A program made the translations under genes and the position numbers. The notes under the pieces are model-generated. The model had not been told where the DNA came from and made no database searches. It saw nothing but the letters and a program-made list of their open reading frames with translations. Shown here in pieces: positions 12,931 to 48,373 of a stretch of DNA of 64,000 bases (position 1 is the stretch's first letter; the number at the start of each line of letters is the position of its first letter). This DNA is from Iphione sp. A-MEVVRFRX5 (lineage: Eukaryota): the NCBI GenBank assembly GCA_976226885.1, contig OZ320319.1:66464001-66528000 (forward strand), read 5' to 3'.

Positions 12931-15567
12931 CTTGGGGAGCCACTTCATGACGCTCTTTCTTCATAATGATGACTTTAGTTGTTTCTGGTTGCTGTATTTC
13001 CTCAGGCATAGCTTCCTCTGTAACAAAGGAAACTGTCTCCTCAACTGTCTCAGGTTCCATGTCAGCTTTCTGCATGACCACCTTCTGAGTAATCTTGGAT
13101 GTGACCTTGGCCTGACTGACTGGTGTTTCAACAATGGATTCAGGTTGAGCTTTCTCAGTTGTGAACATGATGGTTTCCTGAACTGTTTCAGGAGTCACTT
13201 CTGCTTCTTGTGTTACAACCTTCTGAGTTATCTGAGATGTCACCTTCACCTCACTTACTTTCTTTTTACTAATAGGCTCTGGTTGAGCCTCCTCTGTTGT
13301 CAATTCAACAGCTTCCTCCACAGTCTCAGGTGCCATTTCTTCTTCCTGAGTGCTAACAATTTGGGGTATTTGTTCTTCAACTGTGACTTGTTCAACAGAT
13401 TTGTCAGCAATCTCTTCTGGCTGAGTCTCCTCAGTTACAAACATGGCTGTTTCTTCAACTGATTCTGGAACAAACTCTACTTGTTGAGTGCTGACTTGCT
13501 GAGCTTCTTCCTTTTTAATAATTACTTTAGCTGTTTCTGGTTGCTGTATTTCCTCAGGCATGGCTTCCTCTGTAATAAAGGAAACTGTCTCCTCAACTGT
13601 CTCAGGCTCCATGTCAGCTTTCTGCATGACCACCTTCTGAGTAATCTTGGATGTGACCTTGGCCTGACTGACTGGTGTTTCGGCAATGGATTCAGGTTGA
13701 GCTTCCTTAGTTGTGAACATGATGGTTTCCTCAACTGTTTCAGGAGTCACTTCTGCTTCTTGTGTTACAACCTTCTGTGTTATCTGAGATGTCACCTTCA
13801 CCTCACTTACTTTCTTTTCACTAATAGGCTCTGGTTGAGCCTCCTCTGTTGTCAATTCAACAGCTTCCTCAATAGTCTCAGGTGCCATTTCTTCTTCCTG
13901 AGTGCTAACAATTTGGGGTATTTGTTCTTCAACTGTGACTTGTTCAACAGATTTGTCAGCAATCTCTTCCGGCTGAGTCTCCTCAGTTACAAACATGGCT
14001 GATTCCTCAACTGATTCTGGAACAAACTCTATCTGTTGAGTGCTGACCTGCTGAACTTCTTCCTTTTTAATGATTACTTCAGCTGTTTCTGGTTGCTGTA
14101 CTTCCTCAGGCATAGCTTCCTCTGTGATAAAGGAAACTGTCTCCTCAACTGTCTCAGGTTCCATGTCAGCTTTCTGCATGACCACCTTCTGAGTAATCTT
14201 GGATGTGACCTTGGCCTGACTGACTGGTGTGTCAGCAATGGATTCAGGCTGAGCTTCCTCAGTGGTGAATGTTACAGTTTCTTCAACTGTTTCAGGAGTC
14301 ACCTCTGCTTCTTGTGTTACAACCTTTTGAGTTATTTGAGAAGTCACCTTCACTTGACTGACTGGTTTGTCAGCAACGGATTCAGGCTGAGCTTCTACAG
14401 TTGTGAACATAATGGATTCTTCCACAGATTCAGGTGCTAACTCAGCCTTCTGAATGCCCACTACCTGGGGAATTTGCTCTCCAACACTTATATGATCAAC
14501 TGGCTTCTGTGCAATCTCTTCTGGTTGAGCTTCCTCAGTTGTAAACACAGCTGCCTCTTCAAAGGAGTCGGGCACGAATTCTACCTGCTGAGTGCTAACC
14601 TGATGGGCTTCTTTCATCTTTATTGTCACAGTTTGGTCGTCTTTCTTAGGAACCTCCTCTAAAGACGCAACTTCCTCCTGTATTGTTTGCTGAATTTCTT
14701 GGGTTCGATCCGATTCAATAGTTACCTTTTGTTCAATAGTCAATGTTTGGCTCACAGGTGTAGTTGCTACTTCGCCCATCTCAAAAGTCACTTGTTGCAA
14801 CTGAGCTGATTCCTTTTCAGGCGAGATATCCTCAGTGTCTTTTGTTTCCTCAACTTGCATCTGTGAGAGCTGCTCCATGGCATGAATTTCTGGTGCTGTT
14901 GTTGGGGCTGCCTCGGATAGGTCCATGGTAATAGCCACAGGTGCAAGTTCTTCTGATGCATCCTCAAACAAGTCTTCCTCAGCTTCCTCAGGGGAGACTT
15001 GTGAGATCTGCTCAGATGTCATAACTTCTAGGGGTTGCTCAGCTTTCGCCTGACTGATCTCATACTGTACTGGACTGGCTTCAATCTCTTCTGTTGTGGT
15101 CGGCTTCATTTCCTCGCGTGTTTCTTCACTGATCGTGGGTGCCATCTGTATTTCACCCATAGCCTGTACTTCTGCTGGCAAAGAGATGCCAGGCTGCATC
15201 ATTTCAACTTGGATCTGACCGGAAGTAGCAGATTCTTCGCTGAAAGTGCCTGGCTCCTCTTGTGTCATCTCGAGGGAAATGTGTTCCTGCTGTACCTGTC
15301 CCATGGCTTGCACCTGAGCAGGCACTGCTATTCCCGCTTGGACAAATTGTACGGGAGCCTGTGAAGGCTCAGCAGTTTCAGATACCTCTTCTCCTATAGC
15401 TTCTGATATTTCCTCTGATTTGAGAATAAGTTCTTGCGTTCCAACCTGTGTATGACTAGGCATTTGTTTACTCTCTAACACCTTCACCTCTGTGTGGATT
15501 TCTTCAGGGGTCACCACTTCGAGTGGTATAGGGGATATGTCTTCCTCTGTGAATTCTATCTTTACCA
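12931..15567 (-). CDS. Titin-like PEVK-like exon (879 codons) containing three 184-aa repeats
   Basis: AG at 15569-15568, GTATAT at 12930; 2637 bp, phase 1-1; E/V/T/Q/P-rich. Confidence 0.85.
12965..14620 (-). repeat. Coding higher-order repeat: 3 x 552 bp (184 aa = 4 x 46 aa)
   Basis: ccatgtcagctttctgcatgacc starts at 13057, 13609 and 14161; four 46-aa subunits counted by hand. Confidence 0.92.
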
Positions 15568-16385
15568 CTGAAATATGTTACAAAATATGGAATATTTCAC
15601 GATTCAGTAAAGTAATTAAAGATGTATTAACAGTGAACTTATTCGTAGAAATGTTACCAGACAAATAGTAATGGTCAGGTTGATAATCTGAGTCAATTGA
15701 ATATGAAGATATACGGAGGAAGGTTGCGTGAAGGTTTGCATTTACATTGCAAATCTTAGCACATATTTGCAATAAAAGAACCAAGTTGAATAAAACGTCT
15801 ATCTAATCATAATCCAATTATTAGGGCATTTCTATTTTAACGCCTTATAACTCATGCAAGAACATTTTCATGAAATGCATTCACTATTTGCTGAACATCA
15901 TAAACTGAAACCTGAACAGCATAAATTGAAATAAAAGATCTTCTCGCATTGCTGAAATCCATTATCGAATTCAGAAATCCTGAAAAAAAACATGCTAAAA
16001 TATCAGTTTTATAAATGATAAGCATGCTCATGAAACGAACAAGAAGTGGCAAAATAAAGAAGAACGTATTTTCAAATGAAATGAGCGCTGAACTAAGAAG
16101 CATCATAGTAACTGAAAGAAAGAGTATAGATTATACTAAACTATGCATGAAACACATGCTAAGCTAAAGCATCTGTGCTTTCCGAAACTACCTGTGTCAC
16201 ATCATGCAAACTGTGGTGCTCGTCCACATTTTTCCATGCGTAATGTGACATCTGGAGATGCTAAGCATGATGGAAGTGCGATCTCTTCTATTTTCAGGCA
16301 GGACAAATGGATTCATATGCTTATGAAACCGAATGAGAAAAGATGGCGACTTTTTCAAAGTCATGCACTATCCTGTTGTATATAC

Positions 16386-19300
16386 CTTCACTTTCTTCTG
16401 GTGCTTCGCCTAGCTTCTCCTTTATATCTGTTGTTAGCGTCAAAGGCGTTGATTTTTCTTCAACTGGAACGAATTCTTCCTCAGCCTCATATTCAGCAGG
16501 TACTTTCAACTCATCTTCTGTAACCGTTTCTGGTATCATCTCATCTTCGTCAACAGAGACAAATGTTTCAGGCAATATTCCAAGGCTAACTTGTTCAGGT
16601 GATGGCGCCATTTCTTCTGTAGGCACCGTGTCCTCTGGTTCTGTAGGACATATTTCCTCTGATATTTCCTCTGATGAAAGGATGGTTTCTTGTTCACTTA
16701 CTTGAGTGAGTTCTGGCATCTGAATTCCTGCAGTAGAAACTTGGAGAGTAATTTCTGATGGCTGTACCTCCTCATCTTTCTCCATCACAACCTCTTCAGT
16801 GACAGTGTCTGGTTTAAATTCAGCATGCTGAATTCCTGCTTGTGTCAACTGAGGCATTTCTACTCCCGCTGTAGAGATCTCTACAGTGATTTCCGATGGT
16901 TGGACTTCTTCATCTTTCTGAACAACTATCTCTTCAGAGATTGTCTCCTCAGTGATTTCAGCCTCTTGCATTCCAACCTGCACTGGCTCAGGCATCTGAG
17001 ACTCAGTAGTAGGAACTTCAAATGTGATCTCACTTGGATGTACTTCCTCATCTTTGGGAGCAGCTATTTCCTCAGATACAACTTCAGAGGGAACTTCTTC
17101 CTGCTGCATTTCTACCTGACTCTCCTGTGGCATCTGGATACCAGCTGTTGAAATCTCCATAGTGATTTGAGATGGTTTGATCTCCTCATCTTTTTGAATC
17201 ACTATTTCCTCAGATATATGCTCTTCCTTGAGTGGGGCTTCCTGAATGCCAACTTGAGTAGGCTGTGGCATCTGAATTCCTGCAGTGGACACTTGCAGAG
17301 TGATCTCTGATGGCTGTACCTCCTCATCTTTCTCCATCACAACCTCTTCAGTGACAGTGTCTGGTTTAAATTCAGCATGCTGAATTCCTGCTTGTGTCAA
17401 CTGAGGCATTTCTACTCCCGCTGTAGAGATCTCTACAGTGATTTCCGATGGTTGGACTTCTTCATCTTTCTGAACAACTATCTCTTCAGAGATTGTCTCC
17501 TCAGTGATTTCAGCCTCTTGCATTCCAACCTGCACTGGCTCAGGCATCTGAGACTCAGTAGTAGGAACTTCAAATGTGATCTCACTTGGATGTACTTCCT
17601 CATCTTTGGGAGCAGCTATTTCCTCAGATACAACTTCAGAGGGAACTTCTTCCTGCTGCATTTCTACCTGACTCTCCTGTGGCATCTGGATACCAGCTGT
17701 TGAAATCTCCATAGTGATTTGAGATGGTTTGATCTCCTCATCTTTTTGAATCACTATTTCCTCAGATATATGCTCTTCCTTGAGTGGGGCTTCCTGAATG
17801 CCAACTTGAGTAGGCTGTGGCATCTGAATTCCTGCAGTGGACACTTGCAGAGTGATCTCTGATGGCTGTACCTCCTCATCTTTCTCCATCACAACCTCTT
17901 CAGTGACAGTGTCTGGTTTAAATTCAGCATGCTGAATTCCTGCTTGTGTCAACTGAGGCATTTCTACTCCCGCTGTAGAGATCTCTACAGTGATTTCCGA
18001 TGGTTGGACTTCTTCATCTTTCTGAACAACTATCTCTTCAGAGATTGTCTCCTCAGTGATTTCAGCCTCTTGCATTCCAACCTGCACTGGCTCAGGCATC
18101 TGAGACTCAGTAGTAGGAACTTCAAATGTGATCTCACTTGGATGTACTTCCTCATCTTTGGGAGCAGCTATTTCCTCAGATACAACTTCAGAGGGAACTT
18201 CTTCCTGCTGCATTTCTACCTGACTCTCCTGTGGCATCTGGATACCAGCTGTTGAAATCTCCATAGTGATTTGAGATGGTTTGATCTCCTCATCTTTTTG
18301 AATCACTATTTCCTCAGATATATGCTCTTCCTTGAGTGGGGCTTCCTGAATGCCAACTTGAGTAGGCTGTGGCATCTGAATTCCTGCAGTGGACACTTGC
18401 AGAGTGATCTCTGATGGCTGTACCTCCTCATCTTTCTCCATCACAACCTCTTCAGTGACAGTGTCTGGTTTAAATTCAGCATGCTGAATTCCTGCTTGTG
18501 TCAACTGAGGCATTTCTACTCCCGCTGTAGAGATCTCCATAGTGATTTCAGATGGTTGGACTTCTTCATCTTTCTGAACAACTATCTCTTCAGAGATTGT
18601 CTCCTCAGTGATTTCAGCCTCTTGCATTCCAACCTGCACTGGCTCAGGCATCTGAGACTCAGTAGTAGGAACTTCAAATGTGATCTCACTTGGATGTACT
18701 TCCTCATCTTTGGGAGCAGCTATTTCCTCAGATACAACTTCAGAGGGAACTTCTTCCTGCTGCATTTCTACCTGACTCTCCTGTGGCATCTGGATACCAG
18801 CTGTTGAAATCTCCATAGTGATTTGAGATGGTTTGATCTCCTCATCTTTTTGAATCACTATTTCCTCAGATATATGCTCTTCCTTGAGTGGGGCTTCCTG
18901 AATGCCAACTTGAGTAGGCTGTGGCATCTGAATTCCTGCAGTGGACACTTGCAGAGTGATCTCTGATGGCTGTACCTCCTCATCTCTCTCCATCACAACC
19001 TCTTCAGTGACAGTGTCTGGTTTAAATTCAGCATGCTGAATTCCTGCTTGTGTCAACTGAGGCATTTCTACTCCCGCTGTAGAGATCTCCATAGTGATTT
19101 CAGATGGTTGGACTTCTTCATCTTTCTGAACAACTATCTCTTCAGAGATTGTCTCCTCAGTGATTTCAGCCTCTTGCATTCCAACCTGCACTGGCTCAGG
19201 CATCTGAGACTCAGCAGTAGGAACTTCAAATGTGATCTCACTTGGATGTACTTCCTCATCTTTGGGAGCAGCTATTTCCTCAGATACAACTTCAGAGGGA

Positions 19301-22300
19301 ACTTCTTCCTGCTGCATTTCTACCTGACTCTCCTGTGGCATCTGGATACCAGCTGTTGAAATCTCCATAGTGATTTGAGATGGTTTGATCTCCTCATCTT
19401 TTTGAATCACTATTTCCTCAGATATATGCTCTTCCTTGAGTGGGGCTTCCTGAATGCCAACTTGAGTAGGCTGTGGCATCTGAATTCCTGCAGTGGACAC
19501 TTGCAGAGTGATCTCTGATGGCTGTACCTCCTCATCTTTCTCCATCACAACCTCTTCAGTGACAGTGTCTGGTTTAAATTCAGCATGCTGAATTCCTGCT
19601 TGTGTCAACTGAGGCATTTCTACTCCCGCTGTAGAGATCTCTACAGTGATTTCCGATGGTTGGACTTCTTCATCTTTCTGAACAACTATCTCTTCAGAGA
19701 TTGTCTCCTCAGTGATTTCAGCCTCTTGCATTCCAACCTGCACTGGCTCAGGCATCTGAGACTCAGCAGTAGGAACTTCAAATGTGATCTCACTTGGATG
19801 TACTTCCTCATCTTTGGGAGCAGCTATTTCCTCAGATACAACTTCAGAGGGAACTTCTTCCTGCTGCATTTCTACCTGACTCTCCTGTGGCATCTGGATA
19901 CCAGCTGTTGAAATCTCCATAGTGATTTGAGATGGTTTGATCTCCTCATCTTTTTGAATCACTATTTCCTCAGATATATGCTCTTCCTTGAGTGGGGCTT
20001 CCTGAATGCCAACTTGAGTAGGCTGTGGCATCTGAATTCCTGCAGTGGACACTTGCAGAGTGATCTCTGATGGCTGTACCTCCTCATCTTTCTCCATCAC
20101 AACCTCTTCAGTGACAGTGTCTGGTTTAAATTCAGCATGCTGAATTCCTGCTTGTGTCAACTGAGGCATTTCTACTCCCGCTGTAGAGATCTCCATAGTG
20201 ATTTCAGATGGTTGGACTTCTTCATCTTTCTGAATAACTATCTCTTCAGAGATTGTCTCCTCAGTGATTTCAGCCTCTTGCATTCCAACCTGCACTGGCT
20301 CAGGCATCTGAGACTCAGCAGTAGGAACTTCAAATGTGATCTCACTTGGATGTACTTCCTCATCTTTGGGAGCAGCTATTTCCTCAGATACAACTTCAGA
20401 GGGAACTTCTTCCTGCTGCATTTCTACCTGACTCTCCTGTGGCATCTGGATACCAGCTGTTGAAATCTCCATAGTGATTTGAGATGGTTTGATCTCCTCA
20501 TCTTTTTGAATCACTATTTCCTCAGATATATGCTCTTCCTTGAGTGGGGCTTCCTGAATGCCAACTTGAGTAGGCTGTGGCATCTGAATTCCTGCAGTGG
20601 ACACTTGCAGAGTGATCTCTGATGGCTGTACCTCCTCATCTTTCTCCATCACAACCTCTTCAGTGACAGTGTCTGGTTTAAATTCAGCATGCTGAATTCC
20701 TGCTTGTGTCAACTGAGGCATTTCTACTCCCGCTGTAGAGATCTCCATAGTGATTTCAGATGGTTGGACTTCTTCATCTTTCTGAATAACTATCTCTTCA
20801 GAGATTGTCTCCTCAGTGATTTCAGCCTCTTGCATTCCAACCTGCACTGGCTCAGGCATCTGAGACTCAGCAGTAGGAACTTCAAATGTGATCTCACTTG
20901 GATGTACTTCCTCATCTTTGGGAGCAGCTATTTCCTCAGATACAACTTCAGAGGGAACTTCTTCCTGCTGCATTTCTACCTGACTCTCCTGTGGCATCTG
21001 GATACCAGCTATTGAAATCTCCATAGTGATTTGAGATGGTTTGATCTCCTCATCTTTTTGAATCACTATTTCCTCAGATATATGCTCTTCCTTGAGTGGG
21101 GCTTCCTGAATGTCAACTTGAGTAGGCTGTGGCATCTGAATTCCTGCAGTGGACACTTGCAGAGTGATCTCTGAGGGCTGTACCTCCTCATCTTTCTCCA
21201 TCACAACCTCTTCAGTGACAGTGTCTGGTTTAAATTCAGCATGCTGAATTCCTGCTTGTGTCAACTGAGGCATTTCTACTCCCGCTGTAGAGATCTCTAC
21301 AGTGATTTCCGATGGTTGGACTTCTTCATCTTTCTGAACAACTATCTCTTCAGAGATTGTCTCCTCAGTGATTTCAGCCTCTTGCATTCCAACCTGCACT
21401 GGCTCAGGCATCTGAGACTCAGCAGTAGGAACTTCAAATGTGATCTCACTTGGATGTACTTCCTCATCTTTGGGAGCAGCTATTTCCTCAGATACAACTT
21501 CAGAGGGAACTTCTTCCTGCTGCATTTCTACCTGACTCTCCTGTGGCATCTGGATACCAGCTGTTGAAATCTCCATAGTGATTTGAGATGGTTTGATCTC
21601 CTCATCTTTTTGAATCACTATTTCCTCAGATATATGCTCTTCCTTGAGTGGGGCTTCCTGAATGCCAACTTGAGTAGGCTGTGGCATCTGAATTCCTGCA
21701 GTGGACACTTGCAGAGTGATCTCTGATGGCTGTACCTCCTCATCTTTCTCCATCACAACCTCTTCAGTGACAGTGTCTGGTTTAAATTCAGCATGCTGAA
21801 TTCCTGCTTGTGTCAACTGAGGCATTTCTACTCCCGCTGTAGAGATCTCCATAGTGATTTCAGATGGTTGGACTTCTTCATCTTTCTGAATAACTATCTC
21901 TTCAGAGATTGTCTCCTCAGTGATTTCAGCCTCTTGCATTCCAACCTGCACTGGCTCAGGCATCTGAGACTCAGCAGTAGGAACTTCAAATGTGATCTCA
22001 CTTGGATGTACTTCCTCATCTTTGGGAGCAGCTATTTCCTCAGATACAACTTCAGAGGGAACTTCTTCCTGCTGCATTTCTACCTGACTCTCCTGTGGCA
22101 TCTGGATACCAGCTGTTGAAATCTGCATTGTGATCTGAGTGGACTTGATCTCCTCATCTTTTTGAATCACTATTTCTTCAGATATATGCTCTTCCTTGAG
22201 TGGGGCTTCCTGAATGCCAACTTGAGTAGGCTGTGGCATCTGAATTCCTGCAGTGGACACTTGCAGAGTGATCTCTGATGGCTGTACCTCCTCATCTTTC

Positions 22301-25300
22301 TCCATCACAACCTCTTCAGTGACAGTGTCTGGTTTAAATTCAGCATGCTGAATTCCTGCTTGTGTCAACTGAGGCATTTCTACTCCCGCTGTAGAGATCT
22401 CTACAGTAATTTCCGATGGTTGGACTTCTTCATCTTTCTGAACAACTATCTCTTCAGAGATTGTCTCCTCAGTGATTTCAGCCTCTTGCATTCCAGCCTG
22501 CACTGGCTCAGGCATCTGAGACTCAGCAGTAGGAACTTCAAATGTGATCTCACTTGGATGTACTTCCTCATCTTTGGGAGCAGCTATTTCCTCAGATACA
22601 ACTTCAGAGGGAACTTCTTCCTGCTGCACTTCTACCTGACTCTCCTGTGGCATCTGGATACCAGCTGTTGAAATCTCCATAGTGATTTGAGATGGTTTGA
22701 TCTCCTCATCTTTTTGAATCACTATTTCCTCAGATATATGCTCTTCCTTGAGTGGGGCTTCCTGAATGCCAACTTGAGTAGGCTGTGGCATCTGAATTCC
22801 TGCAGTGGACACTTGCAGAGTGATCTCTGATGGCTGTACCTCCTCATCTTTCTCCATCACAACCTCTTCAGTGACAGTGTCTGGTTTAAATTCAGCATGC
22901 TGAATTCCTGCTTGTGTCAACTGAGGCATTTCTACTCCCGCTGTAGAGATCTCTACAGTGATTTCCGATGGTTGGACTTCTTCATCTTTCTGAACAACTA
23001 TCTCTTCAGAGATTGTCTCCTCAGTGATTTCAGCCTCTTGCATTCCAACCTGCACTGGCTCAGGCATCTGAGACTCAGCAGTAGGAACTTCAAATGTGAT
23101 CTCACTTGGATGTACTTTCTCATCTTTGGGAGCAGCTATTTCCTCAGATACAACTTCAGAGGGAACTTCTTCCTGCTGCATTTCTACCTGACTCTCCTGT
23201 GGCATCTGGATACCAGCTGTTGAAATCTGCATTGTGATCTGAGTGGACTTGATCTCCTCATCCTTTTGAATCACTATTTCCTCAGATATATGCTCTTCCT
23301 TGAGTGGGGCTTCCTGAATGCCAACTTGAGTAGGCTGTGGCATCTGAATTCCTGCAGTGGACACTTGCAGAGTGATCTCTGATGGCTGTACCTCCTCATC
23401 TTTCTCCATCACAACCTCTTCAGTGACAGTGTCTGGTTTAAATTCAGCATGCTGAATTCCTGCTTGTGTCAACTGAGGCATTTCTACTCCCGCTGTAGAG
23501 ATCTCTACAGTGATTTCCGATGGTTGGACTTCTTCATCTTTCTGAACAACTATCTCTTCAGAGATTGTCTCCTCAGTGATTTCAGCCTCTTGCATTCCAA
23601 CCTGCACTGGCTCAGGCATCTGAGACTCAGCAGTAGGAACTTCAAATGTGATCTCACTTGGATGTACTTCCTCATCTTTGGGAGCAGCTATTTCCTCAGA
23701 TACAACTTCAGAGGGAACTTCTTCCTGCTGCATTTCTACCTGACTCTCCTGTGGCATCTGGATACCAGCTGTTGAAATCTCCATAGTGATTTGAGATGGT
23801 TTGATCTCCTCATCTTTTTGAATCACTATTTCCTCAGATATATGCTCTTCCTTGAGTGGGGCTTCCTGAATGCCAACTTGAGTAGGCTGTGGCATCTGAA
23901 TTCCTGCAGTGGACACTTGCAGAGTGATCTCTGATGGCTGTACCTCCTCATCTTTCTCCATCACAACCTCTTCAGTGACAGTGTCTGGTTTAAATTCAGC
24001 ATGCTGAATTCCTGCTTGTGTCAACTGAGGCATTTCTACTCCCGCTGTAGAGATCTCTACAGTGATTTCCGATGGTTGGACTTCTTCATCTTTCTGAACA
24101 ACTATCTCTTCAGAGATTGTCTCCTCAGTGATTTCAGCCTCTTGCATTCCAACCTGCACTGGCTCAGGCATCTGAGACTCAGCAGTAGGAACTTCAAATG
24201 TGATCTCACTTGGATGTACTTCCTCATCTTTGGGAGCAGCTATTTCCTCAGATACAACTTCAGAGGGAACTTCTTCCTGCTGCATTTCTACCTGACTCAT
24301 CTGTGGCATTTGAATGCCTGCAGATGCCACCTGCTGAGTGATTTGAGAGGGTTCAATTGCCTCATCTTTTTCTATGAGAACTTCTTCAGAGAATGTTTCA
24401 TGTTTGATTTCAGTTTGCTGAATTCCTACTTGTGTCAACTGGGGCATCTGAATTCCTGCTGTTGAAATCTCCAGATAAATTTCTGATGGCTGAACTTTTT
24501 CATCCTTTTGGATGAGAAGGGCTTCTGATACTGTTTCTACAGTCACTTCAGACTGTTGCATTTCCACCTGAAGTGGTTGAGGCATTTGTGACTCAGCAGA
24601 TAACCCCTCAAACACTACCTCAGTTGGCAGTACGTCTACATCTTTTGGAGCTGCAGTTCCCTCAGATACAACTTCCATAGGGATATCTTCCAACTTTGTC
24701 CCAACTTGAGTCATTTGTGGCATATGGATACCAGCTTTGGAAATCTCAAGAGGTATTTCAGTAGTTTTTACTTCCTCCTCCTTCTGGGTCAATATTTCTT
24801 CTGAGATGATATCTTCCTTAAGCTGAACTTCTTGTGTACCTACCTGAGTAAGCTGGGGCACTTGGATTCCTGCAGTAGATACTTGCAGAGTTATCTCAGA
24901 TGGCTTGACTTTCTCATCCTTCTCTATCACGACATCTTCAGTAACAGTGTCTGTTGTAAACTGAGCATGCTGAACATCTACCTGTGTCAACTGAGGCATT
25001 CCAACTCCCACTGTGGATATCTCCATGGTGATTTCAGATGGCTGAATTTCTTCATCTTTGGGTGCAGCAATTGTTTCTGATATGGCTTCTATGGCTACTT
25101 CCGCCTGCTGCATTTCTGTCTGGACTGGTTTGGGCAGTTGTTTCTCAACAGTCGGTATGTCTAAAACAACTTTTGTTGGCTGAATCTCCTTATCCTCTGG
25201 ATGAGTAATTTCTTCTGAAACAGTGTCATAAAAGATCTCCTCTTCTAGCGTTTCAACTTGTGTCGTTTGTGGCATCTGTATTCCTGCTGTAGAAACCTCC

Positions 25301-25763
25301 AATGTGATCTCAGTAGATTTGATTCCTTCATCTTTCTGAGTCACTATTTCTCCAGAAATCCTTTCCCCTTTGAGATGAACTTCCTGTACACCCACCTGAC
25401 TTGGCCGTGGCATCTGAACTTCTGCGGTAACAGCATGTCTATGCATTTCAGACGGAATCACTTTTTTGATCAATGTTTGCTCTTCACGAAGTTCCTGCAC
25501 TTCGTCTTCCTTAGGGAAATCAATCTTAGTTACCTGTGTAACTTGAGAAGGAACTATATCAACTGTTACTGTCTTGGTTTCTTTTTCGGTGCGGAAGGTT
25601 TCTATTGTCTGTTGAGGCGTTGCTATTTCAAAGGAAACTGGCTCAAAGCCACTCTTTTCGGGTAATTCTAACTGAACTTGTTCTGAGACATATTTTGTCT
25701 CAGGTTGACTTTTCTCCAGCTTCACTGCTATAGGGCCTACCTGGATTTCAGCACGCTGCAAGG
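16386..25763 (-). CDS. Giant 9378-bp PEVK-like exon (3126 codons), mostly tandem repeat
   Basis: tttgtAG acceptor at 25765-25764 is the phase-1-compatible choice; GTATAT donor at 16385; open throughout. Confidence 0.85.
16710..24310 (-). repeat. Coding higher-order tandem array: ~14 near-identical 552-bp units (184 aa = 4 x 46 aa), with diverged 138-bp monomers extending to ~25400
   Basis: Antisense shadow ORFs start every 552 bp from 16825 to 24001; units differ by only a few substitutions. Confidence 0.97.
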
Positions 25764-34200: not shown

Positions 34201-36345
34201 CTCTTAATCGTCTCTTCAGATCGTCGTGTTCTTTCATTTTCGGTAACTCCTCCTCAGTGAGGTCACGCTCCTCCTCTGTGTACCTATGGTCGACGTCTGA
34301 ACCTTTCGTCTCTGTAAATTCTTCCGTCCTTCTCAGTTTTCCAGGTTTTGCTTTGATTTTGACTTGTGTGGTCACCTTTCCGTCTGCTAGGATACCAGCC
34401 TGGATGTGTGTGGGGAGGCTGTCAAACTCGACCTCACTAACTTTCTCCTCAGTTTCCCAGATTTCATATTCTGCCTGATACTCTACTTTAGCATGCCTCT
34501 TCCTTTCCTCATATTCTTTAAGGGTGTAGGTCTTTGTGTATTCGGTGATCTCTTCAAAATGTTCGCGGAGCTCTTCCTGATGGTACACCCAGACGGACTC
34601 ATCCTTTACGTTGCCCTTTTTCTTTTCTATTACAGCCTCCAGCGCTTCAACTGGCTCTTCCTCGGGAAGCGATTCCACCTCACCTTCCGAAACACTCAGC
34701 TCTGAAGGCTCTAGGAAAATTTCCTCTTTCTTCGTCGAAACCTCAGCCTCAACCTCTACTACTTTCTCGATCTGTGTAATCTCTTCTACCTCCTGCGTAT
34801 GTTCCGTTAATGTCTCCTCATCATGGACCCACGCTGACGCATCGGACGCCTTTCCTTCTACTTCCTTTACTTTAACTTCACTGGCACTTACACTCGCTTC
34901 TACCTCTTCTGAAATAGTCTCAAACTGTTCTGACACAAACGCCTCATGCTGAGACAAATCTCTTGTATCGACTTTCATCTCTTTTGATTCAACTACCTCT
35001 CTATATTCCTCAACCTCCTCAAAATGTTCAACGAGCGTATCTTCTTTATGGACCCAGGCTGAGCTGTCCTTTGGCTTGTCTAATTTGACCTCAGAACAGG
35101 TTTCAATCCCTTCTACAGATTCTACTTCAGGTTCACCTATACTTTCGAGAGTACCCTCTGATGCCTGCTCTGAAAGAACCTCCTGCTTTGCTGTAACCTC
35201 CTCCTTAATGTGTTCAACTCTAGTGTATTCCTCAACTTCCTGGAAATGCTCAGTAATCTCATCGTCGCTAAACACCCAGGCAGAGTCGTCTTTTGCCCTC
35301 TGTGCTGGTTTCTCCGCGACCACTTCGCTAGCATCTACAATATCTATTTCAACCTCAGTCAGCGAACCTATCGTTCCCTCGGAGGCACGTTCAGACACGA
35401 CCTCCTGTGAAGTGATAAGTTCAATCTCTCTAGTCTTTGTGACCTCTGTGAACTCTTCTACCTCTTGGAAATGTTCAGTAACTTCGTCATCACTGAAAAC
35501 CCACACCGACGCGTCTTTTGCTTTTTGCTTGGGTTTCTCAGTGACCTCTTCGCTAAGATCTACGGTCTCAATATCTAACTCATTCAACGAATGGGTTGTG
35601 CCCTCTGACACACGTTCAGACAGAACTTCGGAAGCCATCAGTTCGGCTTCAGTAGTCTCTACCTGCTCCCTGTATTCTTCTACCTCCTCAAAATGTTCAG
35701 TCACTTCATCGTCGTCAAATACCCACACAGAGGTATCCCTTGCCTGATGGATATCCTGCTTTTCAACAACTGCCTCACTAACTTCATCGGAAGCAACACT
35801 GGATAATGAACGAACCTCACCCTCAGAAGCACTACTCAGCACTTCAGGCTCTACAAAAATATCCTTTTTCAATTCAGCACCTTTCTCTTGTTCAGTTAAT
35901 TCGGGAATATCAAACGCATGGGTTTCAATTGGCACGTCGAACTGAAAAGTGACTAGATCATCAATGGGGGGACCAGACTGATGTCCTGGGATGGGAGCAT
36001 CGACAGGGGGTACTTCGTCAGGAACTATTTCGTCTTCGACGACTGGCTGCCTGTCTGGGGATGGCGACCTTGGCCTCCGTGGAGGCTCGACCTCCTCTGG
36101 AACAATCAACGGTTCATCAATGGGTGACGGAGGCCTGTCATCATCGGGAGCTTTGCCGGGGCGATAACTAGGGGCGCGAGTCTCTGGAATGATCTCTTCT
36201 TCCACAACGGGCTCACCTTTTGTCTCCGTTTTGGCTACTTGCAATGTCATCTCTGACGTGCTCAACGCCACCTCCGGCTTCTTCACCTCGACAGTTGTCT
36301 TTGTCGTGTGAGTCACGGTCTCCAACATCTCTTCGGTGATCTCCT
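28228..36345 (-). CDS. Giant 8118-bp exon (2706 codons): acidic PEVK-like region with several repeat families and a terminal Ig-I domain
   Basis: AG at 36347-36346, GTGTGT donor at 28227; phase 1-1; ends ...VREGQAARFECRF...WLFNG...TGSYTCRATDQRG. Confidence 0.85.
29340..30019 (-). repeat. Coding 138-bp (46-aa) basic repeat, 4 full copies plus 1 diverged (DVEKA..VSRAKRHSIEVQV)
   Basis: ttcaattgaatg starts at 29672, 29810 and 29948; units start at 30019 and step down to 29467. Confidence 0.92.
30175..30490 (-). repeat. Coding 156-bp (52-aa) tandem duplication (ADNISDVDLTEASESLTEVTLDT...)
   Basis: tatctg anchor at 30325 and 30481. Confidence 0.9.
34538..35737 (-). repeat. Six diverged 74-80-aa coding repeats with a DxSxWV....E..EHF.EVEEY core
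   Basis: Motif starts at 35737, 35515, 35290, 35068, 34843 and 34603 (74, 75, 74, 75, 80 aa spacing). Confidence 0.85.
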
Positions 36346-41925: not shown

Positions 41926-42328
41926 CTGCAGAGAGGAGGCCAGTGGGACGTGAATCATCGTACATCCATAAGTATCTATAGATGACTGACTACCACAAGA
42001 CATAAGACATGCAAAAATAATAAGATTTGTCTGCATATTTGGAGGGCTCAAGCTCGAAGTGTTACGACGTATTTACCGGTATATCTACACATCATACACC
42101 ACGAGATCGGAAAAGGAAGGGAGATTAACTTCTAAATGCTCAATAAAGAGAATATGGATGTAAAAAGACCGTGTGAAATATAACAATATATTTAAGCTTT
42201 ATCAATGCATAATTTTTAATGCCTTATCCAATATATCGCAAAAATGAAACATAAGCATTACGAAATCAATTATGATCCTATCGGTCCAAAGGTGTGTAAA
42301 AGGTATCAAGTGGCAACGTTTTGATTAC

Positions 42329-42462
42329 CTGGTACCAGATGATCTCCGGCTCTGGGTGAGCAGCCACGCGGCACTCGAGCGTAACGGGCATCGACTCAAA
42401 GATTTCCTTGTGCTCCAGCATCTGCGTGAACCGCGGGGCTTCGGGCACCAGTTCGACCACTT
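42329..42462 (-). CDS. Titin-like exon, N-terminal half of an Ig domain
   Basis: APRFTQML...VTLECRVAAHPEPEIIWYQ; AG at 42464-42463, GTAATC at 42328; phase 1-0. Confidence 0.88.
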
Positions 42463-42879: not shown

Positions 42880-43087
42880 TATACAAGCGAAGGGAACACA
42901 AGCGACGTTTCTCATATATGCATAAGACATTGATCAAACATGAAATACAAACTTGATATATGAACACAAAAATTTTGATTTAAAAGTTACTCGTGTGCAT
43001 TTTCACTGCTTAAAAAGAATGAGTCGTCAAGACTGTTCTTTAAAAATAATAGAAAAGATGTAAAACTGACAGGCCGGGCCTACTTAC

Positions 43088-46000
43088 GCAGGACGGTGAG
43101 GTAGGCGGTGGTGACACAGGTGCCTGCCTCGTTGACTGCCTTGACGGCGTATTCTCCCTCGTCGTCGGGCAGCACGTCGGCGATGTAAAGCGTGCACACG
43201 TCCTGCTCGTAGGTGATCCGCACATCCTCCGACTCCTGGATGATACGGCCCTCCACATACCAAGTCACCGTCGGCTTGGGCACTCCCTTGACGCGGCAGA
43301 CCAGTGTGGCCCGCTCGCCGTCAGAGGCCGTGACATCGGATAGTGGCAGCTCGAAGACGGGCGCCATCAGTGACTGGGCGGGTACCCTCGGCGCCTGCGT
43401 AACTTCCGGGACGATTGTAGAGGAGCTCGGCTCGGGTTTACGGATGACGGAAATCTCCTCCGACATGAACTCCGTCACTACCTCCTGCTCCTCGGTAACC
43501 TCCTGCGCAGTGCGAACGACCTGCTCGGTTTTGATGGCTTCTTGCAGTTCTATCTGTTTGCGTGCCATCTCGGGTGAGACCTTCTCCACTGAGAATGAGA
43601 GGTTTTGTTCTGCAGCCGCCTCCACAGACATAGTAACCTTCTGCTCCTGCGTCTGGAATTTCTGCAACTCCTTCTGCGCTTGCTTAAGGCTGGCGGTCTC
43701 CTCTGTGGGTGCGACCTCGGCTTGCTCTAAAAAATGCTGCTGTTGTTCGGTGGTGGTTTCCACGGTGCGGCTGACTGATGATGGCCGCACCATGGTCTCG
43801 AGGCGGTAGCGTTCTATGACGGCCGGTTCGTACTCTGGCCTCACAATGGCAGGGATCATGATAATCTCCTTGATGTTGGCCAGGTATTCCTCGGCAATAC
43901 CTTCAGGCGAATGGCGCTCTTCGACTGGCTCGATGCGAGTCTCCGGTTTGTCGCCCTCCTTGGGTGTTCGGAGCATCACTACAACGTCCTCTTCCATGGG
44001 GATTTCTTCATCGTAACCCTCAACGTCGGCCCGGGTCGTCAGAACGTCGACCAGTTCCTCAAAGGTGCCAACCCGCGACTGAGTCGGCGAGCGAATGTCA
44101 CAGAGTTCCAGGTCGACAGCCACGTTCGATTGCATGGTAGTCTCCTGGTTGGCGTCATCTAGGTCAAGGGATTCAGTCTTCTGAGGTACCGTCACCTTCT
44201 CCTGGACTCCAACCATGGATGGGCGACGTTCTTTCTTCTGTGCCTTGTCAAGGATAACCACCACCTCTTCTGGCTTGGTTTCGGTCACTTCAAACTCAAT
44301 CTGAGCATCTTCAGTGTCTTCTATAGACTGGTGAGCCTGAAGTGTAGGAACAAGCGTCTGTGCCTTTTCTTCCACGAGGGGAGTCGCCAGGTCAACCACA
44401 ACTTCTTCGCCAGGAATTTCTGGTTCTGTTGCTTCGAAGAATATGTCTTCTTCTTCCTCTTCTGAGTGACGTTCTTCTGTATAGTCTACATGAGCAGGCC
44501 TAAGATCCTCAACTTTGGACTGCTCAAATACTTTGGTAACTTCTTCTTCGTCGGGTGCAACTGGAGATGGCATTCGGTCCAAGATGTCAGTGATGGACTC
44601 CTCACTGATTTTCTCTTCCTGAGTTTGGACGAGGCTCTCACGGGCAGCCTCCAAAACATTGCGACCAAGGTCGACTTTGACTTCTTTGCCTTCAGTGGAT
44701 GCAGGCTCTGTGCTGTCCACGAATTCTTGAGTCATTTCCTCACGGAGATCCTCGACCTGCGTCAGGACGTAGGATTCTGTCACTGGTTGAACCGATGACC
44801 TACGTAGCTCCACGCGCACCTCACTACGTGATGGTGTTTGCTCATCAGGTACAGGAGAAATTGCACCGGTTCCCTCCTCAGAAACGTCTTCTCGGACTTC
44901 ACCGACGTGAGTTTCTTCTTTAGATTTCTCAATCTCCTGTATCATTTCCACGATAATTTCCTCCTGTTGGGTCGTTTCTGTTGTAGTTTCTTCAACATGT
45001 CCTGTGATCATTTCTGGTGAAACTCTTTCTTCAACTGCTGCAACCATAGATGCAGGCTTCACTTCTGGCTGTACTTGACCAAATTCGACAGTCATTTCTT
45101 CTTGCTGGCTGATTTCTGTCAGTGTTTCTGGCAACTGGTCAGTGATAAGTTCGGGTGAAAGCCTCTCTTCTATAGCTGCTACCATGGCAGTTGGCTGAAC
45201 AGGCTGTGCATGGCCAAGGTCTACAATAATCTCATGTTGTTGTGAGACTTCTTGCACAGTGGAAAGTACTTCCTCAGTTCTTTCTTCTGGCAATGGCATT
45301 TCTTCGATGGCCTGGACCAAAGCAGTTGGCTGCTCAGGTACTGCCAGCTGGAGATCAACAATAACTTCTTTTTGCTGACTTTGCTCTTCTGTTGTGAGCT
45401 GCACAACACCTGAGATTTCTTCTGGGGTTATCTTTTCCTCAACAGCCTGAACCATAGCAGTAGTCCTCTCTGGTTGAGCTTGTCCCAACTGGACAATAAT
45501 TTCTTGTTGATTACTTGTCTCTTCAACAGTTGATGCCACTTCTTCTGTGATCTCCTCGGTTGATACCTTCTCCTCAACAGCTTGGACCATAGCAGTAGTC
45601 CTCTCTGGTTGAGCTTGTCCCAACTGGACAATAATTTCTTGCTGTTTACTTGTCTCTTCAACAGTAGAAGCAACTTCTTCTGTGATCTCTTCAGTAGATA
45701 CCTTCTCCTCAACAGCTTGAACCATAGCAGTAGTCCTCTCTGGTTGAGCTTGTCCCAACTGGACAATAATTTCTTGTTGCTTACCTGTCTCTTCAACAGT
45801 TGATGCAACTTCTTCTGTGATCTCCTCAGTTGATACCTTCTCCTCAACAGCTTGGACCATAGCAGTAGTCCTCTCTGGTTGAGCTTGTCCCAACTGGACA
45901 ATAATTTCTTGTTGCTTACTTGTCTCTTCAACAGTAGAAGCAACTTCTTCTGTGATCTCCTCGGTTGATACCTTCTCCTCAACAGCTTGGACCATAGCAG

Positions 46001-48373
46001 TAGGTCTCTCAGGTTGAGCTTGCTTCAACTGAACAATGATTTCCTGTTGTTGGCTTGTCTCTTCAACTGCTGAAAGTACTACTTCTGTGATCTCTTCAGG
46101 TGTCACCTTTTCTTCGACAGCTGTGACCATAGCAGTTGGTCTCTCTGGTTGTGCCTGCTTTAGATCAACAACAATCTCTTGTTGCTGACTCGTCTCCTCA
46201 ACTGTGGCAACCACTTCCTCAGTGATTTCTTCACTTGTAACTTTCTCCTCCACTGCTTGCACCATAGCAGTTGGGCGTTCTGGTGCAGCCTGTTTCAGTT
46301 CAACAACAATTTCATGTTGCTGAGTCGTCTCCTCAACAGTTGAAGCTACCTCTTCAGTGATCTCTTCAGTTGCAACTTTCTCTTCCACGGCAGAAACCAT
46401 GGCTGTGGGCCTTTCAGGTTGGGCTTGTTTAAGCTGAACCACAATCTCCTGTTGATGAGAAGTTTCCTCCACAGTAGAGGCAACCTCTTCAGTACTTTCG
46501 GGTATGATCTTTTCTTCTACTGCCTGTACCATGGCTGTAGGCCTTTCTGGTTCAGCCTGCTTTAACTGAACAATAATCTCCTGCTGTTGTGTTGTTTCCT
46601 CAACAGTTGAAGGCACCTGTTCCGTGATTTCTTCTGTGGTAACCTTCTCTTCTACTGCTGTAACCATAGCAGTTGGTCGGTCAGGTTGGGCCTGCTTCAG
46701 TTCAACAATGATTTCCCGTTGTTGGGTTGTTTCTTCTACTGTAGAAACTACCTCTTCAGTAATCTCTGGGCTAATTCTCTCTTCTGTTGCTACCACCATG
46801 GCTGTTGGCCTTTCATGTTGGGCTTGTCTCAGATCCACAACTATCTCCTGTTGTCGTGGTATTTCCTCAACCACTGACACTGCACTATCTGTGACATCTT
46901 CCATAGCTATCTGCTCTTCCAGGGCTTTGACCATGGTTGCTGGCTGTGCCGGTTTAGCCTGCTTCAGTTGAACAGTTATTTCTTGTTGATGTGTAATTTC
47001 TTCTGGTGCCATTTCAACCTCTTCAAAGACTTCCTCAGGCATGACGGCCTGCTGCATTTGGGCCTGCATTTCCTTCTTGAAACTAATATCAACAACCTTA
47101 GTTTCAATGTGTCTGACCTCTTGTGGTAGGGTCTGAACCGTTTCTGCCTCAGGCACCATTTCCTCTGTTATCTCTTCCTGCTGTATTTCCTGCTGGGAGA
47201 TTGCCTGCTTGGGTATCTGCCATTTCACGTCTGCCATTTGCACAGTCTCCTCCATGAACTCCTCTGTCATTTCAACCTCTTCCTCTTCAACGTGATCCTC
47301 CTGGATCTCTTGGCGCAGCTTCTCCATCTTGGCAATGAAGGCAGACGTCCTTTCAATGAACTCTATCTCATCCTCACTGACGCATTTCTCATGCTCAGAA
47401 AGTTCTGCTTGTGATGCAGATGCCTCCTCAGAGTCTGGCACGTACTCGTAAACGTCAACCTTGAGGTTTCCTGAGGTGATGGCAGTTCCGTATGGGTTGA
47501 CAGCAATGCACTGATACTCGCCATTGTCCTGAGGGAAGACCTCCATAATGTGCAGGATACACTCTCCAGTTTTCTTGTTGTAGGAGCACTGGAAGTCAGG
47601 ATTCTCCTCGACTGGTTGGTCATTTCTGTACCACGTTATCTCCGGCATTGGGTTCCCTGTGACCACACAGCGGAAGGTGACCTCCTCTCCGTCCATGCAG
47701 TTGATGGAAGCCAGCTCAATGACGAATTTAGGTGGTTCACCATCAATCTGAATCTGGAGCATCTGGCGTTTTGTTTCAATAGCCTCAATGCGCCTCTTCT
47801 GCAGGATGGTCAGCTGAGATGTCTCCTTCTTCTCTGGAGCTATCTCTACTTCCATCTTTACACCGCGAAGGGCAGCAAGCTGCTTGAACTCAATAAAGGA
47901 CTTTTCAATCCTCTTCTCTGGCAGCTTGAAGTGCAGTTCCATTTCCTTCATTTTGGCATGGTGGTCAATGGCAACGGTTTCTGAAAAGCGTCGTTGTTTG
48001 TGTACCAGGGGAATGGATAATGTCTGCCTTTGTGTGGCCTGTGCTTCGACCTGCTTCTTCATTTGGGCGAGAGTCATCTTGGATTCAACCACTTTGGGTG
48101 GTTGAATTTCCACATGAAGCTTCATACCCATTGGAAGGGAATCTCTGCGAGTGAAGAATTCAGATCGTTGAGGCTTTCTCTCTGGCAGGGCAAACTGCAA
48201 TCGATACTCTTTGGGCTTACTATGATGATCAATGGACAGTGTTTCACTGAAGCTTCCAGATTTGAAGACTTTCATCACTGGCTGTGTAACCTGTTGAGCC
48301 TTTGTGGTCTTGACAACTTGAACGGTGCGTTTCACAATTTTCTCTGTGTCTTCATCAGAAGATGAGGATGGCA
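43088..48373 (-). CDS. 5286-bp exon: two Ig-I domains flanking a ~45-aa repeat array
   Basis: Ig motifs EPPKFVIEL...DNGEYQCIAVNPYG and APVFELPL...DEGEYAVKAVNEAG; AG at 48375-48374, GTAAGT at 43087; phase 1-1. Confidence 0.9.
44950..47040 (-). repeat. Coding 135-bp (44-46 aa) repeat, ~15 copies, four of them near-identical (EEKVSTEEITEEVASTVEETSKQQEIIVQLGQAQPERTTAMVQAV)
   Basis: tgtcccaactggacaataatttc starts at 45481 and 45616 and continues at 135-bp spacing. Confidence 0.92.

What the first reader, a model, noticed from the sequence alone, without database searches (positions are those of the whole stretch)
12965..47040. A 45-46-aa period recurs in four sequence-divergent repeat arrays, two with the same 4x46 = 184-aa super-repeat
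Seen: array at 12965-14620 = 3 x (4 x 46 aa); array at 16710-24310 = ~14 x (4 x 46 aa); the basic KRHS array at 29340-30019 = 46-aa units; array at 44950-47040 = mostly 45-aa units. They lie in four different exons and share little obvious sequence, and the KRHS array differs even in charge. Inference: either selection fixes unit length (a molecular ruler matching a filament or binding-partner spacing, or a cryptic small fold), or all derive from one ancient 138-bp module whose length was kept while sequence drifted. Vertebrate titin PEVK uses ~26-28-aa PPAK modules, so this would be a different elastic-module design.
Basis: partly seen in the sequence, partly recalled or inferred. Interest (0 to 1): 0.7.

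Follow-up and report, generated by a model that had tools for sequence, protein, structure and literature searches.

The report
46-residue spring module in worm titin
A giant titin-like muscle gene, reportedly of an annelid worm, builds most of its elastic region from about 108 copies of one acidic, floppy 46-residue unit whose length (not its sequence) is kept across related species, while a fourth, basic 46-residue array looks unrelated.

Summary
On the minus strand, four giant in-frame exons of a titin/Sallimus-like gene carry tandem arrays.
- A: 12 x 46 aa, in three 184-aa super-repeats.
- B: 64 x 46 aa with no indel; 14 super-repeats are 90-100% identical in DNA.
- C: 5 x 46 aa, each with a KRHS site.
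- D: about 16 units of 44-46 aa.

A, B and D are one module family. This rests on profile tests against column-shuffled, locally shuffled and reversed controls, and on hhalign (B-A E 1.4e-6, B-D E 2e-4). C matches none of them (E 0.7-0.85), so its period may be coincidence.

The two 4 x 46 super-repeats arose separately: their sub-unit types show no one-to-one match.

Relatives of exon D keep the module length. Anchor-motif spacing is 45-47 aa in all 25 single intervals. A stretch of four old modules is 189-191 aa in eight of nine sequences and one module shorter in the ninth. The neighbouring Ig domain is only 41-71% identical, and adjacent linkers vary two-fold in length.

AlphaFold2 finds no fold. 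I read this as a polyanionic, PEVK-like entropic spring with a length-constrained module. The cause of the constraint is unknown. No RNA data were available, and I found no relatives of arrays A or B.

The parts
43088..48373 (-). Predicted exon D (5286 nt, phase 1-1): linker, an I-set Ig domain, the module region, a variable linker, then a second I-set Ig domain
   Evidence: ORF and Pfam I-set hits. Acceptor TTATAG|TG and donor CTGC|GTAAGT read. Sequences from related species are collinear with it and with the flanking Ig exons.
44865..47024 (-). Array D: about 16 homogenised modules of 44-46 aa (ORF D residues 451-1170)
   Evidence: Lag 45 autocorrelation. Anchor motif E-[IV]-x-V-x-L spaced 45, 44, 45, 44, then 45 x 10, then 46, 46. 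Units are 53-98% identical in DNA.
43875..44864 (-). Old, non-homogenised modules of exon D (residues 1171-1500). They include the 190-aa DIFFE-to-IKEI stretch at 43878-44447, whose length is conserved across species
   Evidence: Anchor spacing 46, 93, 46, 47, 46. The stretch is 189-191 aa in 8 of 9 sequences and 143 aa (one 47-aa module missing) in one.
28228..36345 (-). Predicted exon C (8118 nt, phase 1-1): about 75-aa repeats x 6 (34451-35818), a long unique region, 52-aa x 2 (30176-30487), the KRHS array, and a terminal I-set Ig domain
   Evidence: EHF[EQ]E[VI] spacing 74, 75, 74, 75, 80.
29333..30022 (-). Array C: 5 x 46 aa, near-neutral (about -1 per unit), each unit with a K-R-H-S site; not detectably related to A, B or D
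   Evidence: DNA identity 68-92% and dN/dS about 0.15-0.45. Profile tests z 0.8, 0.4 and -0.7. Wrap-around score 75 against 73 for shuffled. hhalign E 0.85 and 0.72.
16386..25763 (-). Predicted exon B (9378 nt, phase 1-1)
   Evidence: Acceptor TTTTTGTAG|CC and donor GAAG|GTATAT keep the frame with exons C and A.
16654..25485 (-). Array B: 64 x 46 aa with no indel. The first 8 units are diverged. The next 56 units form 14 super-repeats of 184 aa (16654-24381)
   Evidence: 63/63 intervals of 46. Among the 14 copies, DNA identity is 97-100% for the middle twelve and 90-95% against the two edge copies. The four sub-unit types have pS 0.71-0.89 and pN 0.22-0.32.
12931..15567 (-). Predicted exon A (2637 nt, phase 1-1), joined in frame to exon B across an 818-bp intron
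   Evidence: Acceptor TTTCAG|TG and donor CAAG|GTATAT.
12947..14602 (-). Array A: 12 x 46 aa, as 3 super-repeats of 184 aa
   Evidence: 11/11 intervals of 46. Super-repeats are 81-95% identical in DNA, dN/dS about 0.2-0.35.
14603..15538 (-). Degenerate, B-like modules at the start of exon A (units of about 44-48 aa)
   Evidence: The B-unit HMM hits ORF A at E 7.6e-8. Wrap-around alignment. Model-free anchors are spaced 46, 48, 48.
8227..9963 (-). Downstream exon with a 7/14-aa acidic repeat (9284-9653) and an SH3 domain
   Evidence: Pfam SH3_1 at 3.2e-12. It is 40% identical to the SH3 of a beetle protein that has a repeat-rich N-terminal region, then SH3, Ig and Fn3 domains. TRF 21-bp period.

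Best explanation
The window holds the elastic (I-band-type) part of a giant titin/Sallimus-like muscle gene. Earlier notes of this scan call the animal an annelid.

Shown:
- Three symmetric phase 1-1 exons (D, B, A) are built from one ancestral module of about 46 residues.
- The module is strongly acidic (-7 to -9 net charge per unit; about 20% Glu plus Val, Gln, Thr) and carries 2-3 prolines.
- It has a short hydrophobic anchor (E-[IV]-x-V-x-L), a Pro a few residues later, and an EE-rich boundary.
- It is predicted to be unfolded.
- Arrays grew by tandem duplication of whole modules or of blocks of 2 or 4 modules. Growth is very recent in B, older in A and D.
- The equal period of A, B and D is first of all common descent.
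- Module length is also under constraint: old, non-homogenised modules keep 45-47 residues across species while their sequence drifts, and changes come as whole modules.

Inferred:
- The arrays act as a polyanionic, PEVK-like entropic spring.
- Spring length is tuned in 46-residue quanta by copy number and probably by exon skipping.
- Together the roughly 108 modules (about 4,900 aa) would give near 1.9 micrometres of contour length.

The reason for the length constraint is not known. The KRHS array in exon C is a separate, younger repeat, probably a multi-site kinase target, whose 46-residue period is most simply coincidence.
For: Gene identity:
- I-set Ig domains in five of the ORFs scanned, and an SH3 domain downstream.
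- The SH3 is 40% identical to that of a beetle protein with a repeat-rich region, then SH3, Ig and Fn3.
- Splice signals keep all four exons in phase 1-1, with lengths divisible by three.

One family:
- Column-shuffle profile test: A-B z 4.2 (0/300), B-D z 3.0 (2/300), A-D z 2.0 (16/300).
- Wrap-around alignment to the cyclic B profile: A 605 (shuffled max 205, reversed 223); D 691 (241, 329); P0001 370 (150, 138); P0002 186 (54, 63).
- hhalign: B-A E 1.4e-6 (probability 90%), B-D E 2.1e-4, D-A E 0.008.
- In the 1.18-Gb genome the profile hits only these three exons.

Length constraint:
- Anchor spacing is 45-47 in 25/25 single intervals in 12 sequences from other organisms. Longer intervals are multiples: 91-93 and 138.
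- DIFFE-to-IKEI is 190 x5, 189 x2, 191 x1 and 143 x1 at 32-48% identity (one pair 68%).
- In the same sequences the next linkers range over 72-122 and 26-51 aa.
- The flanking Ig domain is 41-71% identical and has indels of its own.
- The B sub-unit types are saturated at synonymous sites yet have no indel.

Purifying selection: dN/dS well below 1 in A, B and C.

Disorder:
- AF2 on a B tetramer: pLDDT 42.8, no secondary structure.
- AF2 on the D tail: pLDDT 49.5, pTM 0.16, isolated helices only.
- No Pfam or PDB relative.

Charge and composition.

C is separate.
Against: - No RNA or read data could be obtained (none was listed), so exon use and B copy number rest on the assembly and on splice signals.
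- No relative of arrays A or B was found in other species. The cross-species length test therefore covers only the D-exon modules.
- B-D and A-D similarity is modest, and the register used for the hhalign input was chosen with the B profile.
- The AF2 alignments were shallow (9-12 sequences), so a marginal structure cannot be excluded.
- One more distant relative (P0016) has a 149-151-aa repeat upstream of the conserved stretch. Expanded arrays are thus not always built on 46.
- The spring function is an analogy, not a measurement.
Confidence: 0.68

Rival explanations
1. Descent only. The equal period is inherited from one module and kept by the mechanics of tandem duplication and gene conversion, with no protein-level selection on length.
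For: Thirteen of B's 14 core super-repeats are 93-100% identical to one another in DNA; the first core copy is 90% identical to the last and 94-95% to the rest. Parts of D are 93-98% identical. Uniform length inside these arrays therefore needs no selection. Degenerate units in exon A drift to 44-48 aa.
Against: The four old modules between DIFFE and IKEI are only about 25-30% alike, so gene conversion between them is unlikely. Yet the stretch is 189-191 aa in eight of nine sequences whose neighbouring Ig domain is 41-71% identical. The only change seen is the loss of exactly one 47-aa module. Adjacent linkers in the same proteins vary two-fold.
Confidence: 0.17
2. Templated ruler. Each 46-residue module binds one period of a regular partner (thin or thick filament, or a neighbouring titin chain), as nebulin modules do on actin, and the 184-aa super-repeat matches a higher-order period.
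For: Length is conserved without a fold. A conserved short hydrophobic anchor recurs once per module. Super-repeats of 4 modules arose twice.
Against: There is no binding evidence. Super-repeat order is not constant: 4 in A and B, 2 in part of D and in P0001, none in the old modules. A charge of -7 to -9 per module argues against binding acidic actin. Degenerate units of 44-48 aa are tolerated.
Confidence: 0.1
3. All four arrays, including the basic KRHS array, derive from one ancient 138-bp module. C has diverged beyond recognition.
For: The unit length is identical (46 aa) and the array lies in the same gene. C units contain an I-E-V-Q-V stretch that resembles the anchor.
Against: No profile signal: z 0.8, 0.4 and -0.7, wrap-around score equal to shuffled, hhalign E 0.85 and 0.72. 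Motif order and spacing differ, and so does charge. The gene also has coding repeats of 7, 52 and about 75 aa, so one more repeat falling at 45-47 has a chance of roughly one in six (my own estimate).
Confidence: 0.08
4. Cryptic small fold. Each module, or each four-module block, folds into a compact domain, which fixes its length.
For: Indel-free conservation is at least as tight as in the flanking Ig domain. AF2 gives a few helices at pLDDT 65-83 in the D tail.
Against: AF2 gives pLDDT 42.8 with no secondary structure for the B tetramer, and pTM 0.16 for the tail. Each 46-aa module has 2-3 prolines, 20% Glu and 0.1-3% aromatic residues. There is no PDB or Pfam relative.
Confidence: 0.05

Closest known systems
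PEVK spring region of vertebrate titin (PPAK modules of about 26-28 residues plus Glu-rich segments)
   Same: A disordered, proline-punctuated, Glu/Val-rich repeat region lying between Ig domains in the extensible part of a titin-family protein. It is encoded by exons whose phase allows skipping, and length is tuned by module number.
   Different: - The unit is 46 residues, not 26-28.
- P+E+V+K is only 43-49%.
- Lysine is scarce, so the chain is a polyanion rather than a polyampholyte.
- Whole arrays sit in single giant exons rather than one module per small exon.
- No PEVK Pfam or sequence match was seen.
Tandem disordered modules of C. elegans TTN-1 (coding satellites of 117 bp = 39 aa, 24 bp and 42 bp; PMC6210790, which cites Forbes et al. 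2010)
   Same: An invertebrate titin with kilobase-scale, near-identical coding tandem arrays. Assemblies can misjudge their copy number. They are thought to be elastic.
   Different: The unit length differs (46 against 39, 8 and 14 aa). I did not test sequence relatedness because no TTN-1 sequence was on hand. Conservation of module length across species has not, to my knowledge, been shown there.
Drosophila Sallimus (I-band titin) PEVK exons 31 and 32 (PMC12063666)
   Same: Very large spring exons included in long-sarcomere muscles and skipped in short ones. An SH3 domain follows the spring region and Ig/Fn3 domains lie beyond it. [quoted passage not shown]
   Different: The fly and beetle Sls-like fragments tested show no significant match to the 46-aa profile. 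Splicing of the worm exons is inferred only.
Nebulin 35-residue modules with a 7-module super-repeat
   Same: A short module of fixed length, organised in super-repeats, with no globular fold.
   Different: Nebulin is basic, helical on actin and has the SDxxYK motif. The worm module is very acidic and proline-containing, is predicted to be coil, and has a variable super-repeat order. It resembles nebulin only in its length constraint.

Membership tests
Titin/connectin-Sallimus family, extensible (I-band-type) region | Tandem I-set Ig domains flanking long unique or repeat sequence | tested here: met
   Pfam I-set hits at E 1e-16 to 6e-47 in five ORFs. Further Ig exons were mapped by tblastn.
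Titin/connectin-Sallimus family, extensible (I-band-type) region | SH3 domain downstream of the spring region, as in Sls-type proteins | tested here: met
   SH3_1 at 3.2e-12 in 8227-9963. It is 40% identical to the SH3 of a beetle protein with a repeat-rich region, then SH3, Ig and Fn3.
Titin/connectin-Sallimus family, extensible (I-band-type) region | [quoted passage not shown] | not tested
   Reported only by earlier notes of this scan (s1-323585, s1-313927), 80-170 kb downstream on the same strand. I did not check continuity of the gene.
PEVK segment (vertebrate type) | About 70% or more Pro+Glu+Val+Lys, and 26-28-residue PPAK modules | tested here: not met
   P+E+V+K is 43-49% with Lys at 3.6-6.9%. 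The period is 44-46 aa.
PEVK segment (vertebrate type) | Intrinsic disorder with no stable domain | tested here: met
   AF2 gives pLDDT 42.8 and 49.5, pTM 0.10 and 0.16. The alignments were shallow.
Nebulin-like filament ruler | Fixed-length module with constant super-repeat order, helical, binding one filament subunit per module | tested here: inconclusive
   Fixed length: met. Constant super-repeat order: not met, since it is 4, 2 or none. Helicity is not predicted. Binding cannot be tested with these tools.
   Met for A-B and B-D, weak for A-D, not met for C against any.

The most novel reading that the evidence does not exclude
The 46-residue unit is a new kind of length-quantised, unfolded titin module. 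Its once-per-module hydrophobic anchor on a polyanionic chain docks in register onto a periodic partner, either a filament or a parallel titin chain. If so, the worm's spring is also a ruler or zipper, and its stiffness is set by reversible anchor contacts. The neighbouring KRHS array could then be the kinase-controlled switch.
Probability: 0.12. Interest if true: 0.75.

Novelty: new variant of a known kind. Interest (0 to 1): 0.45.

Why it matters
Elastic regions of titins are usually treated as fast-evolving sequence in which only composition and total length matter. Here a predicted-disordered module keeps its length as tightly as a folded Ig domain. It does so across species whose flanking Ig domains are only 41-71% identical, while copy number swings from about 5 to about 20 in one exon and to 64 in another. 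That gives a concrete, testable case of length selection on a disordered repeat. It also gives a third design of titin spring beside the vertebrate PPAK and nematode PEVT modules, in animals whose obliquely striated muscles stretch very far. If the constraint reflects binding in register, it would bear on how invertebrate titins set sarcomere geometry.

Tried and rejected
I replaced it with my own profile dynamic programming and single hhalign runs.
- HMMER unit profiles gave large negative scores on these biased sequences because of its composition correction. They were not usable, apart from the hit of the B profile on ORF A.
- The look-up of sequencing runs listed no run, so read laying was not used and there is no expression or copy-number check.
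- Two protein-database searches with array B (whole exon, region 1-700; and residues 1-644 alone) found nothing.
- The ESM Atlas gave no usable hit, and PDB sequence searches found nothing.
- Two hits of the representative search (P0033, P0041) are unrelated repeat proteins and were set aside.
- Paper searches found no description of an annelid titin spring module. Forbes et al. 2010 on TTN-1 is not held.
- I did not build or search a joined (spliced) protein. Exons were handled one by one.
- I considered and dropped numerical matches of 46 residues to the 14.5-nm myosin or 5.5-nm actin periods. They depend entirely on an assumed extension per residue.

Full report
**What is in the window**

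The minus strand carries very long open reading frames rich in Glu, Val, Thr and Gln. Pfam finds I-set Ig domains in the ORFs at 28223-36370, 43083-48374, 50633-54025, 54878-56197 and 57905-58915. It finds an SH3 domain in 8227-9963. That SH3 is 40% identical (E 4e-16) to the SH3 of a beetle protein with a repeat-rich N-terminal region, then SH3, Ig and Fn3 domains.

Earlier notes of this scan call the animal an annelid. They place Ig/Fn3 super-repeats and a kinase 80-170 kb further downstream on the same strand. I did not verify either point. A LINE element occupies 846-7406 on the plus strand.

The four array-bearing ORFs have good splice signals that keep one frame:

| Exon | Coordinates | Length (nt) |
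|---|---|---|
| D | 48373-43088 | 5286 |
| C | 36345-28228 | 8118 |
| B | 25763-16386 | 9378 |
| A | 15567-12931 | 2637 |

All four are phase 1-1 and divisible by three, so any of them could be skipped without breaking the frame. This is read from the sequence. No sequencing run was listed for the window. I neither built nor searched a joined protein.

**Checking the observation**

Autocorrelation of the translated ORFs gives clear periods:
- A: lags 184 (0.49 identity) and 46.
- B: lags 184 (0.86), 368 and 46.
- C: a local lag of 46.
- D: lags 45, 90 and 135.

TRF sees 138 bp at A, B and C and 135 bp at D. Written in rows of 46, array B stays in register for 64 units, residues 93-3036, window 16654-25485. 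A model-free anchor ([MLV]-P-x-x-x-Q) occurs 64 times at exactly 46 residues, in 63 of 63 intervals. Array A has 12 units at exactly 46, in 11 of 11 intervals. C has five units. D has about 16 units of 44-46.

The B array starts about 1.1 kb further upstream than stated. Degenerate modules also continue in exon A (14603-15538) and exon D (43875-44864). The same gene has coding repeats of other lengths: about 75 aa x 6, 52 aa x 2, and 7 aa.

**Age and selection**

Thirteen of the 14 core super-repeats of B are 93-100% identical to one another in DNA. The first core copy is 90% identical to the last and 94-95% to the rest. The amplification is therefore very recent.

The four sub-unit types inside the super-repeat are old. 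Synonymous differences are saturated (pS 0.71-0.89) while pN is 0.22-0.32, and there is no indel between them. A and C also show dN/dS well below 1. D units range from 53% to 98% DNA identity (all). These are coding sequences under purifying selection.

**Are the arrays related?**

- *Column-shuffle test.* I compared unit profiles in every circular register and shuffled the columns as a control. Results: A-B z 4.2 (0 of 300 shuffles as good), B-D z 3.0 (2/300), A-D z 2.0 (16/300). C against A, B and D gave z 0.8, 0.4 and -0.7.
- *Wrap-around alignment to the cyclic B profile.* ORF A scores 605 (locally shuffled at most 205, reversed 223). ORF D scores 691 (241, 329). ORF C scores 75 (73). The other exons score nothing.
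- *hhalign on two-unit alignments.* B-A E 1.4e-6 (probability 90%), B-D E 2.1e-4, D-A E 0.008, C-D E 0.85, C-B E 0.72. The register of those inputs had been chosen with the B profile, so the full-length, in-register hits are not fully independent.
- *Whole-genome search.* A profile of four-unit blocks, searched over the whole 1.18-Gb assembly, hits only exons A, B and D.

I conclude that A, B and D are one module family and that C is not detectably part of it.

The shared features are an EE-rich boundary, a hydrophobic anchor E-[IV]-x-V-x-L, a proline some residues later followed by a hydrophobic residue, and then another acidic stretch. Net charge is -7 to -9 per module in A, B and D. It is about -1 in C, which has 16.5% basic residues and a K-R-H-S site in each unit.

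**The 4 x 46 super-repeat**

Within each array the four sub-unit types are 16-30 of 46 identical. Between arrays every a-type against b-type pair is 7-12 of 46, with no cyclic one-to-one match. The four-unit order therefore arose, or was homogenised, separately in A and B. Part of D has an 89-aa (two-unit) order, and a related species has a 91-aa (46+45) order.

**Relatives in other species**

A word-indexed search with exon D and an exhaustive HMMER search with its module region found about 20 related sequences. They come from NCBI, ENA, JGI, Logan and Tara metatranscriptomes, and none carries an organism name. They are collinear with exon D and its flanking Ig exons. The Ig domain that ends the exon is 65-71% identical to four of them and 45-46% to two more distant ones.

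1. The anchor motif is spaced 45-47 residues in all 25 single intervals in 12 sequences. The longer intervals are 91-93 and 138. The short ones add up to 46 or 92. The one outlier (100) lies in a sequence that looks frame-shifted. A few of these sequences are near-duplicates, so the intervals are not all independent.
2. The stretch from the conserved DIFFE motif to the IKEI motif holds four old modules that are only about 25-30% alike. Its length is 190, 190, 190, 190, 190, 189, 189 and 191 residues in eight sequences. In a ninth it is 143, which is exactly one 47-residue module less. Pairwise identity over this stretch is 32-48%, with one pair at 68%. In the same proteins the next two linkers range over 72-122 and 26-51 residues, and the folded Ig domain itself shows small indels.
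3. Copy number is free. The distance from ADVKWQ to DIFFE is 929 residues here, 481 in P0001 and 212 in P0002 and P0058. It is far shorter (about 160 residues from the P0030 sequence; not measured by script) in P0030, a 68%-identical relative that lacks the homogenised array. That could also be an assembly collapse or an isoform.

One distant relative, P0016, keeps the 191-residue stretch but has a 149-151-residue repeat upstream. Expanded arrays are therefore not always built on 46. Searches with array B found nothing in other species, so the cross-species evidence covers the D-type modules only. Fragments of a gastropod titin-like protein and of fly and beetle Sls-like proteins show no significant match to the module.

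**Structure**

AlphaFold2 on a B super-repeat, with a 12-row alignment of four-unit blocks, gives mean pLDDT 42.8, pTM 0.10 and no secondary structure. On the 333-residue D tail, with a 9-sequence alignment (the window sequence plus eight relatives), it gives pLDDT 49.5, pTM 0.16 and a few isolated helices at pLDDT 65-83. There is no PDB or Pfam relative. Both alignments are shallow. This argues against a cryptic fold but does not exclude a marginal one.

**Interpretation**

The simplest account is a PEVK-like entropic spring made of one acidic, proline-punctuated module. It is amplified in whole modules or blocks inside cassette-compatible giant exons. The roughly 108 modules would add about 1.9 micrometres of contour length, which is an inference.

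The equal period of A, B and D is common descent. The cross-species data add a real constraint on module length that gene conversion cannot explain. Why length matters is open. Possibilities are spacing of the hydrophobic anchors along a polyanion, binding in register to a periodic partner, or a marginal structure.

Array C is best read as an independent, younger repeat carrying kinase-type sites. With several other repeat lengths in the gene, one more falling at 46 is not remarkable; I estimate the chance at roughly one in six.

**Comparison with what is known**

Vertebrate PEVK uses 26-28-residue PPAK modules in many small exons (established knowledge). C. elegans ttn-1 has coding satellites of 117, 24 and 42 bp whose copy number older assemblies underestimated (PMC6210790). 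[quoted passage not shown]

The worm module works like these but differs in unit length and charge, and I found no sequence similarity to them. I found no paper describing it, though the library lacks most subscription-journal work on invertebrate connectin.

**Limits**

- No run was listed.

Noticed in passing
window 29333-30022 (-): Each of the five 46-aa units of array C carries R-A-K-R-H-S, a basophilic (PKA-type) kinase consensus, in an otherwise acidic gene. Together these hint at multi-site phospho-control of stiffness.
   Followed up: partly
window 34451-35818 (-): Six repeats of about 75 aa (spacing 74, 75, 74, 75, 80) with a conserved W-V-[FHY] ... E-H-F-[EQ]-E-[VI]-E-E-[YFI] motif. 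They are aromatic-rich (6%) and very acidic, and unrelated to the 46-aa module.
   Followed up: partly
window 30176-30487 (-): A 156-bp (52-aa) unit present twice at 92% identity, just upstream of the KRHS array in the protein.
   Followed up: no
window 9284-9653 (-): A 21-bp (7-aa) acidic coding repeat of about 18 copies in the exon that ends in the SH3 domain.
   Followed up: no
window 12931-48373 (-): All four giant exons are phase 1-1 with lengths divisible by three (5286, 8118, 9378 and 2637 nt), so each could be a skippable cassette. This is inferred from splice signals only.
   Followed up: partly
P0036 compared with P0058 (same 90% cluster): P0036 runs from the ADVKWQ region almost directly to the IKEF motif and so lacks all modules, while the related P0058 has them. 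This could be an isoform made by splicing inside the giant exon, or a paralogue.
   Followed up: no
P0016, residues about 500-1300: A distant relative of exon D carries a 149-151-aa tandem repeat in place of the 45-46-aa array, while keeping the 191-aa four-module stretch.
   Followed up: partly
window 41755-41973 and 42314-42451 (-): An Ig domain split over two small exons just downstream of exon D. It is 51-60% identical to the corresponding domain in three relatives.
   Followed up: partly
window 10917-11215: An intronic 50/101-bp tandem repeat, about 6 copies at 82-88% identity.
   Followed up: no
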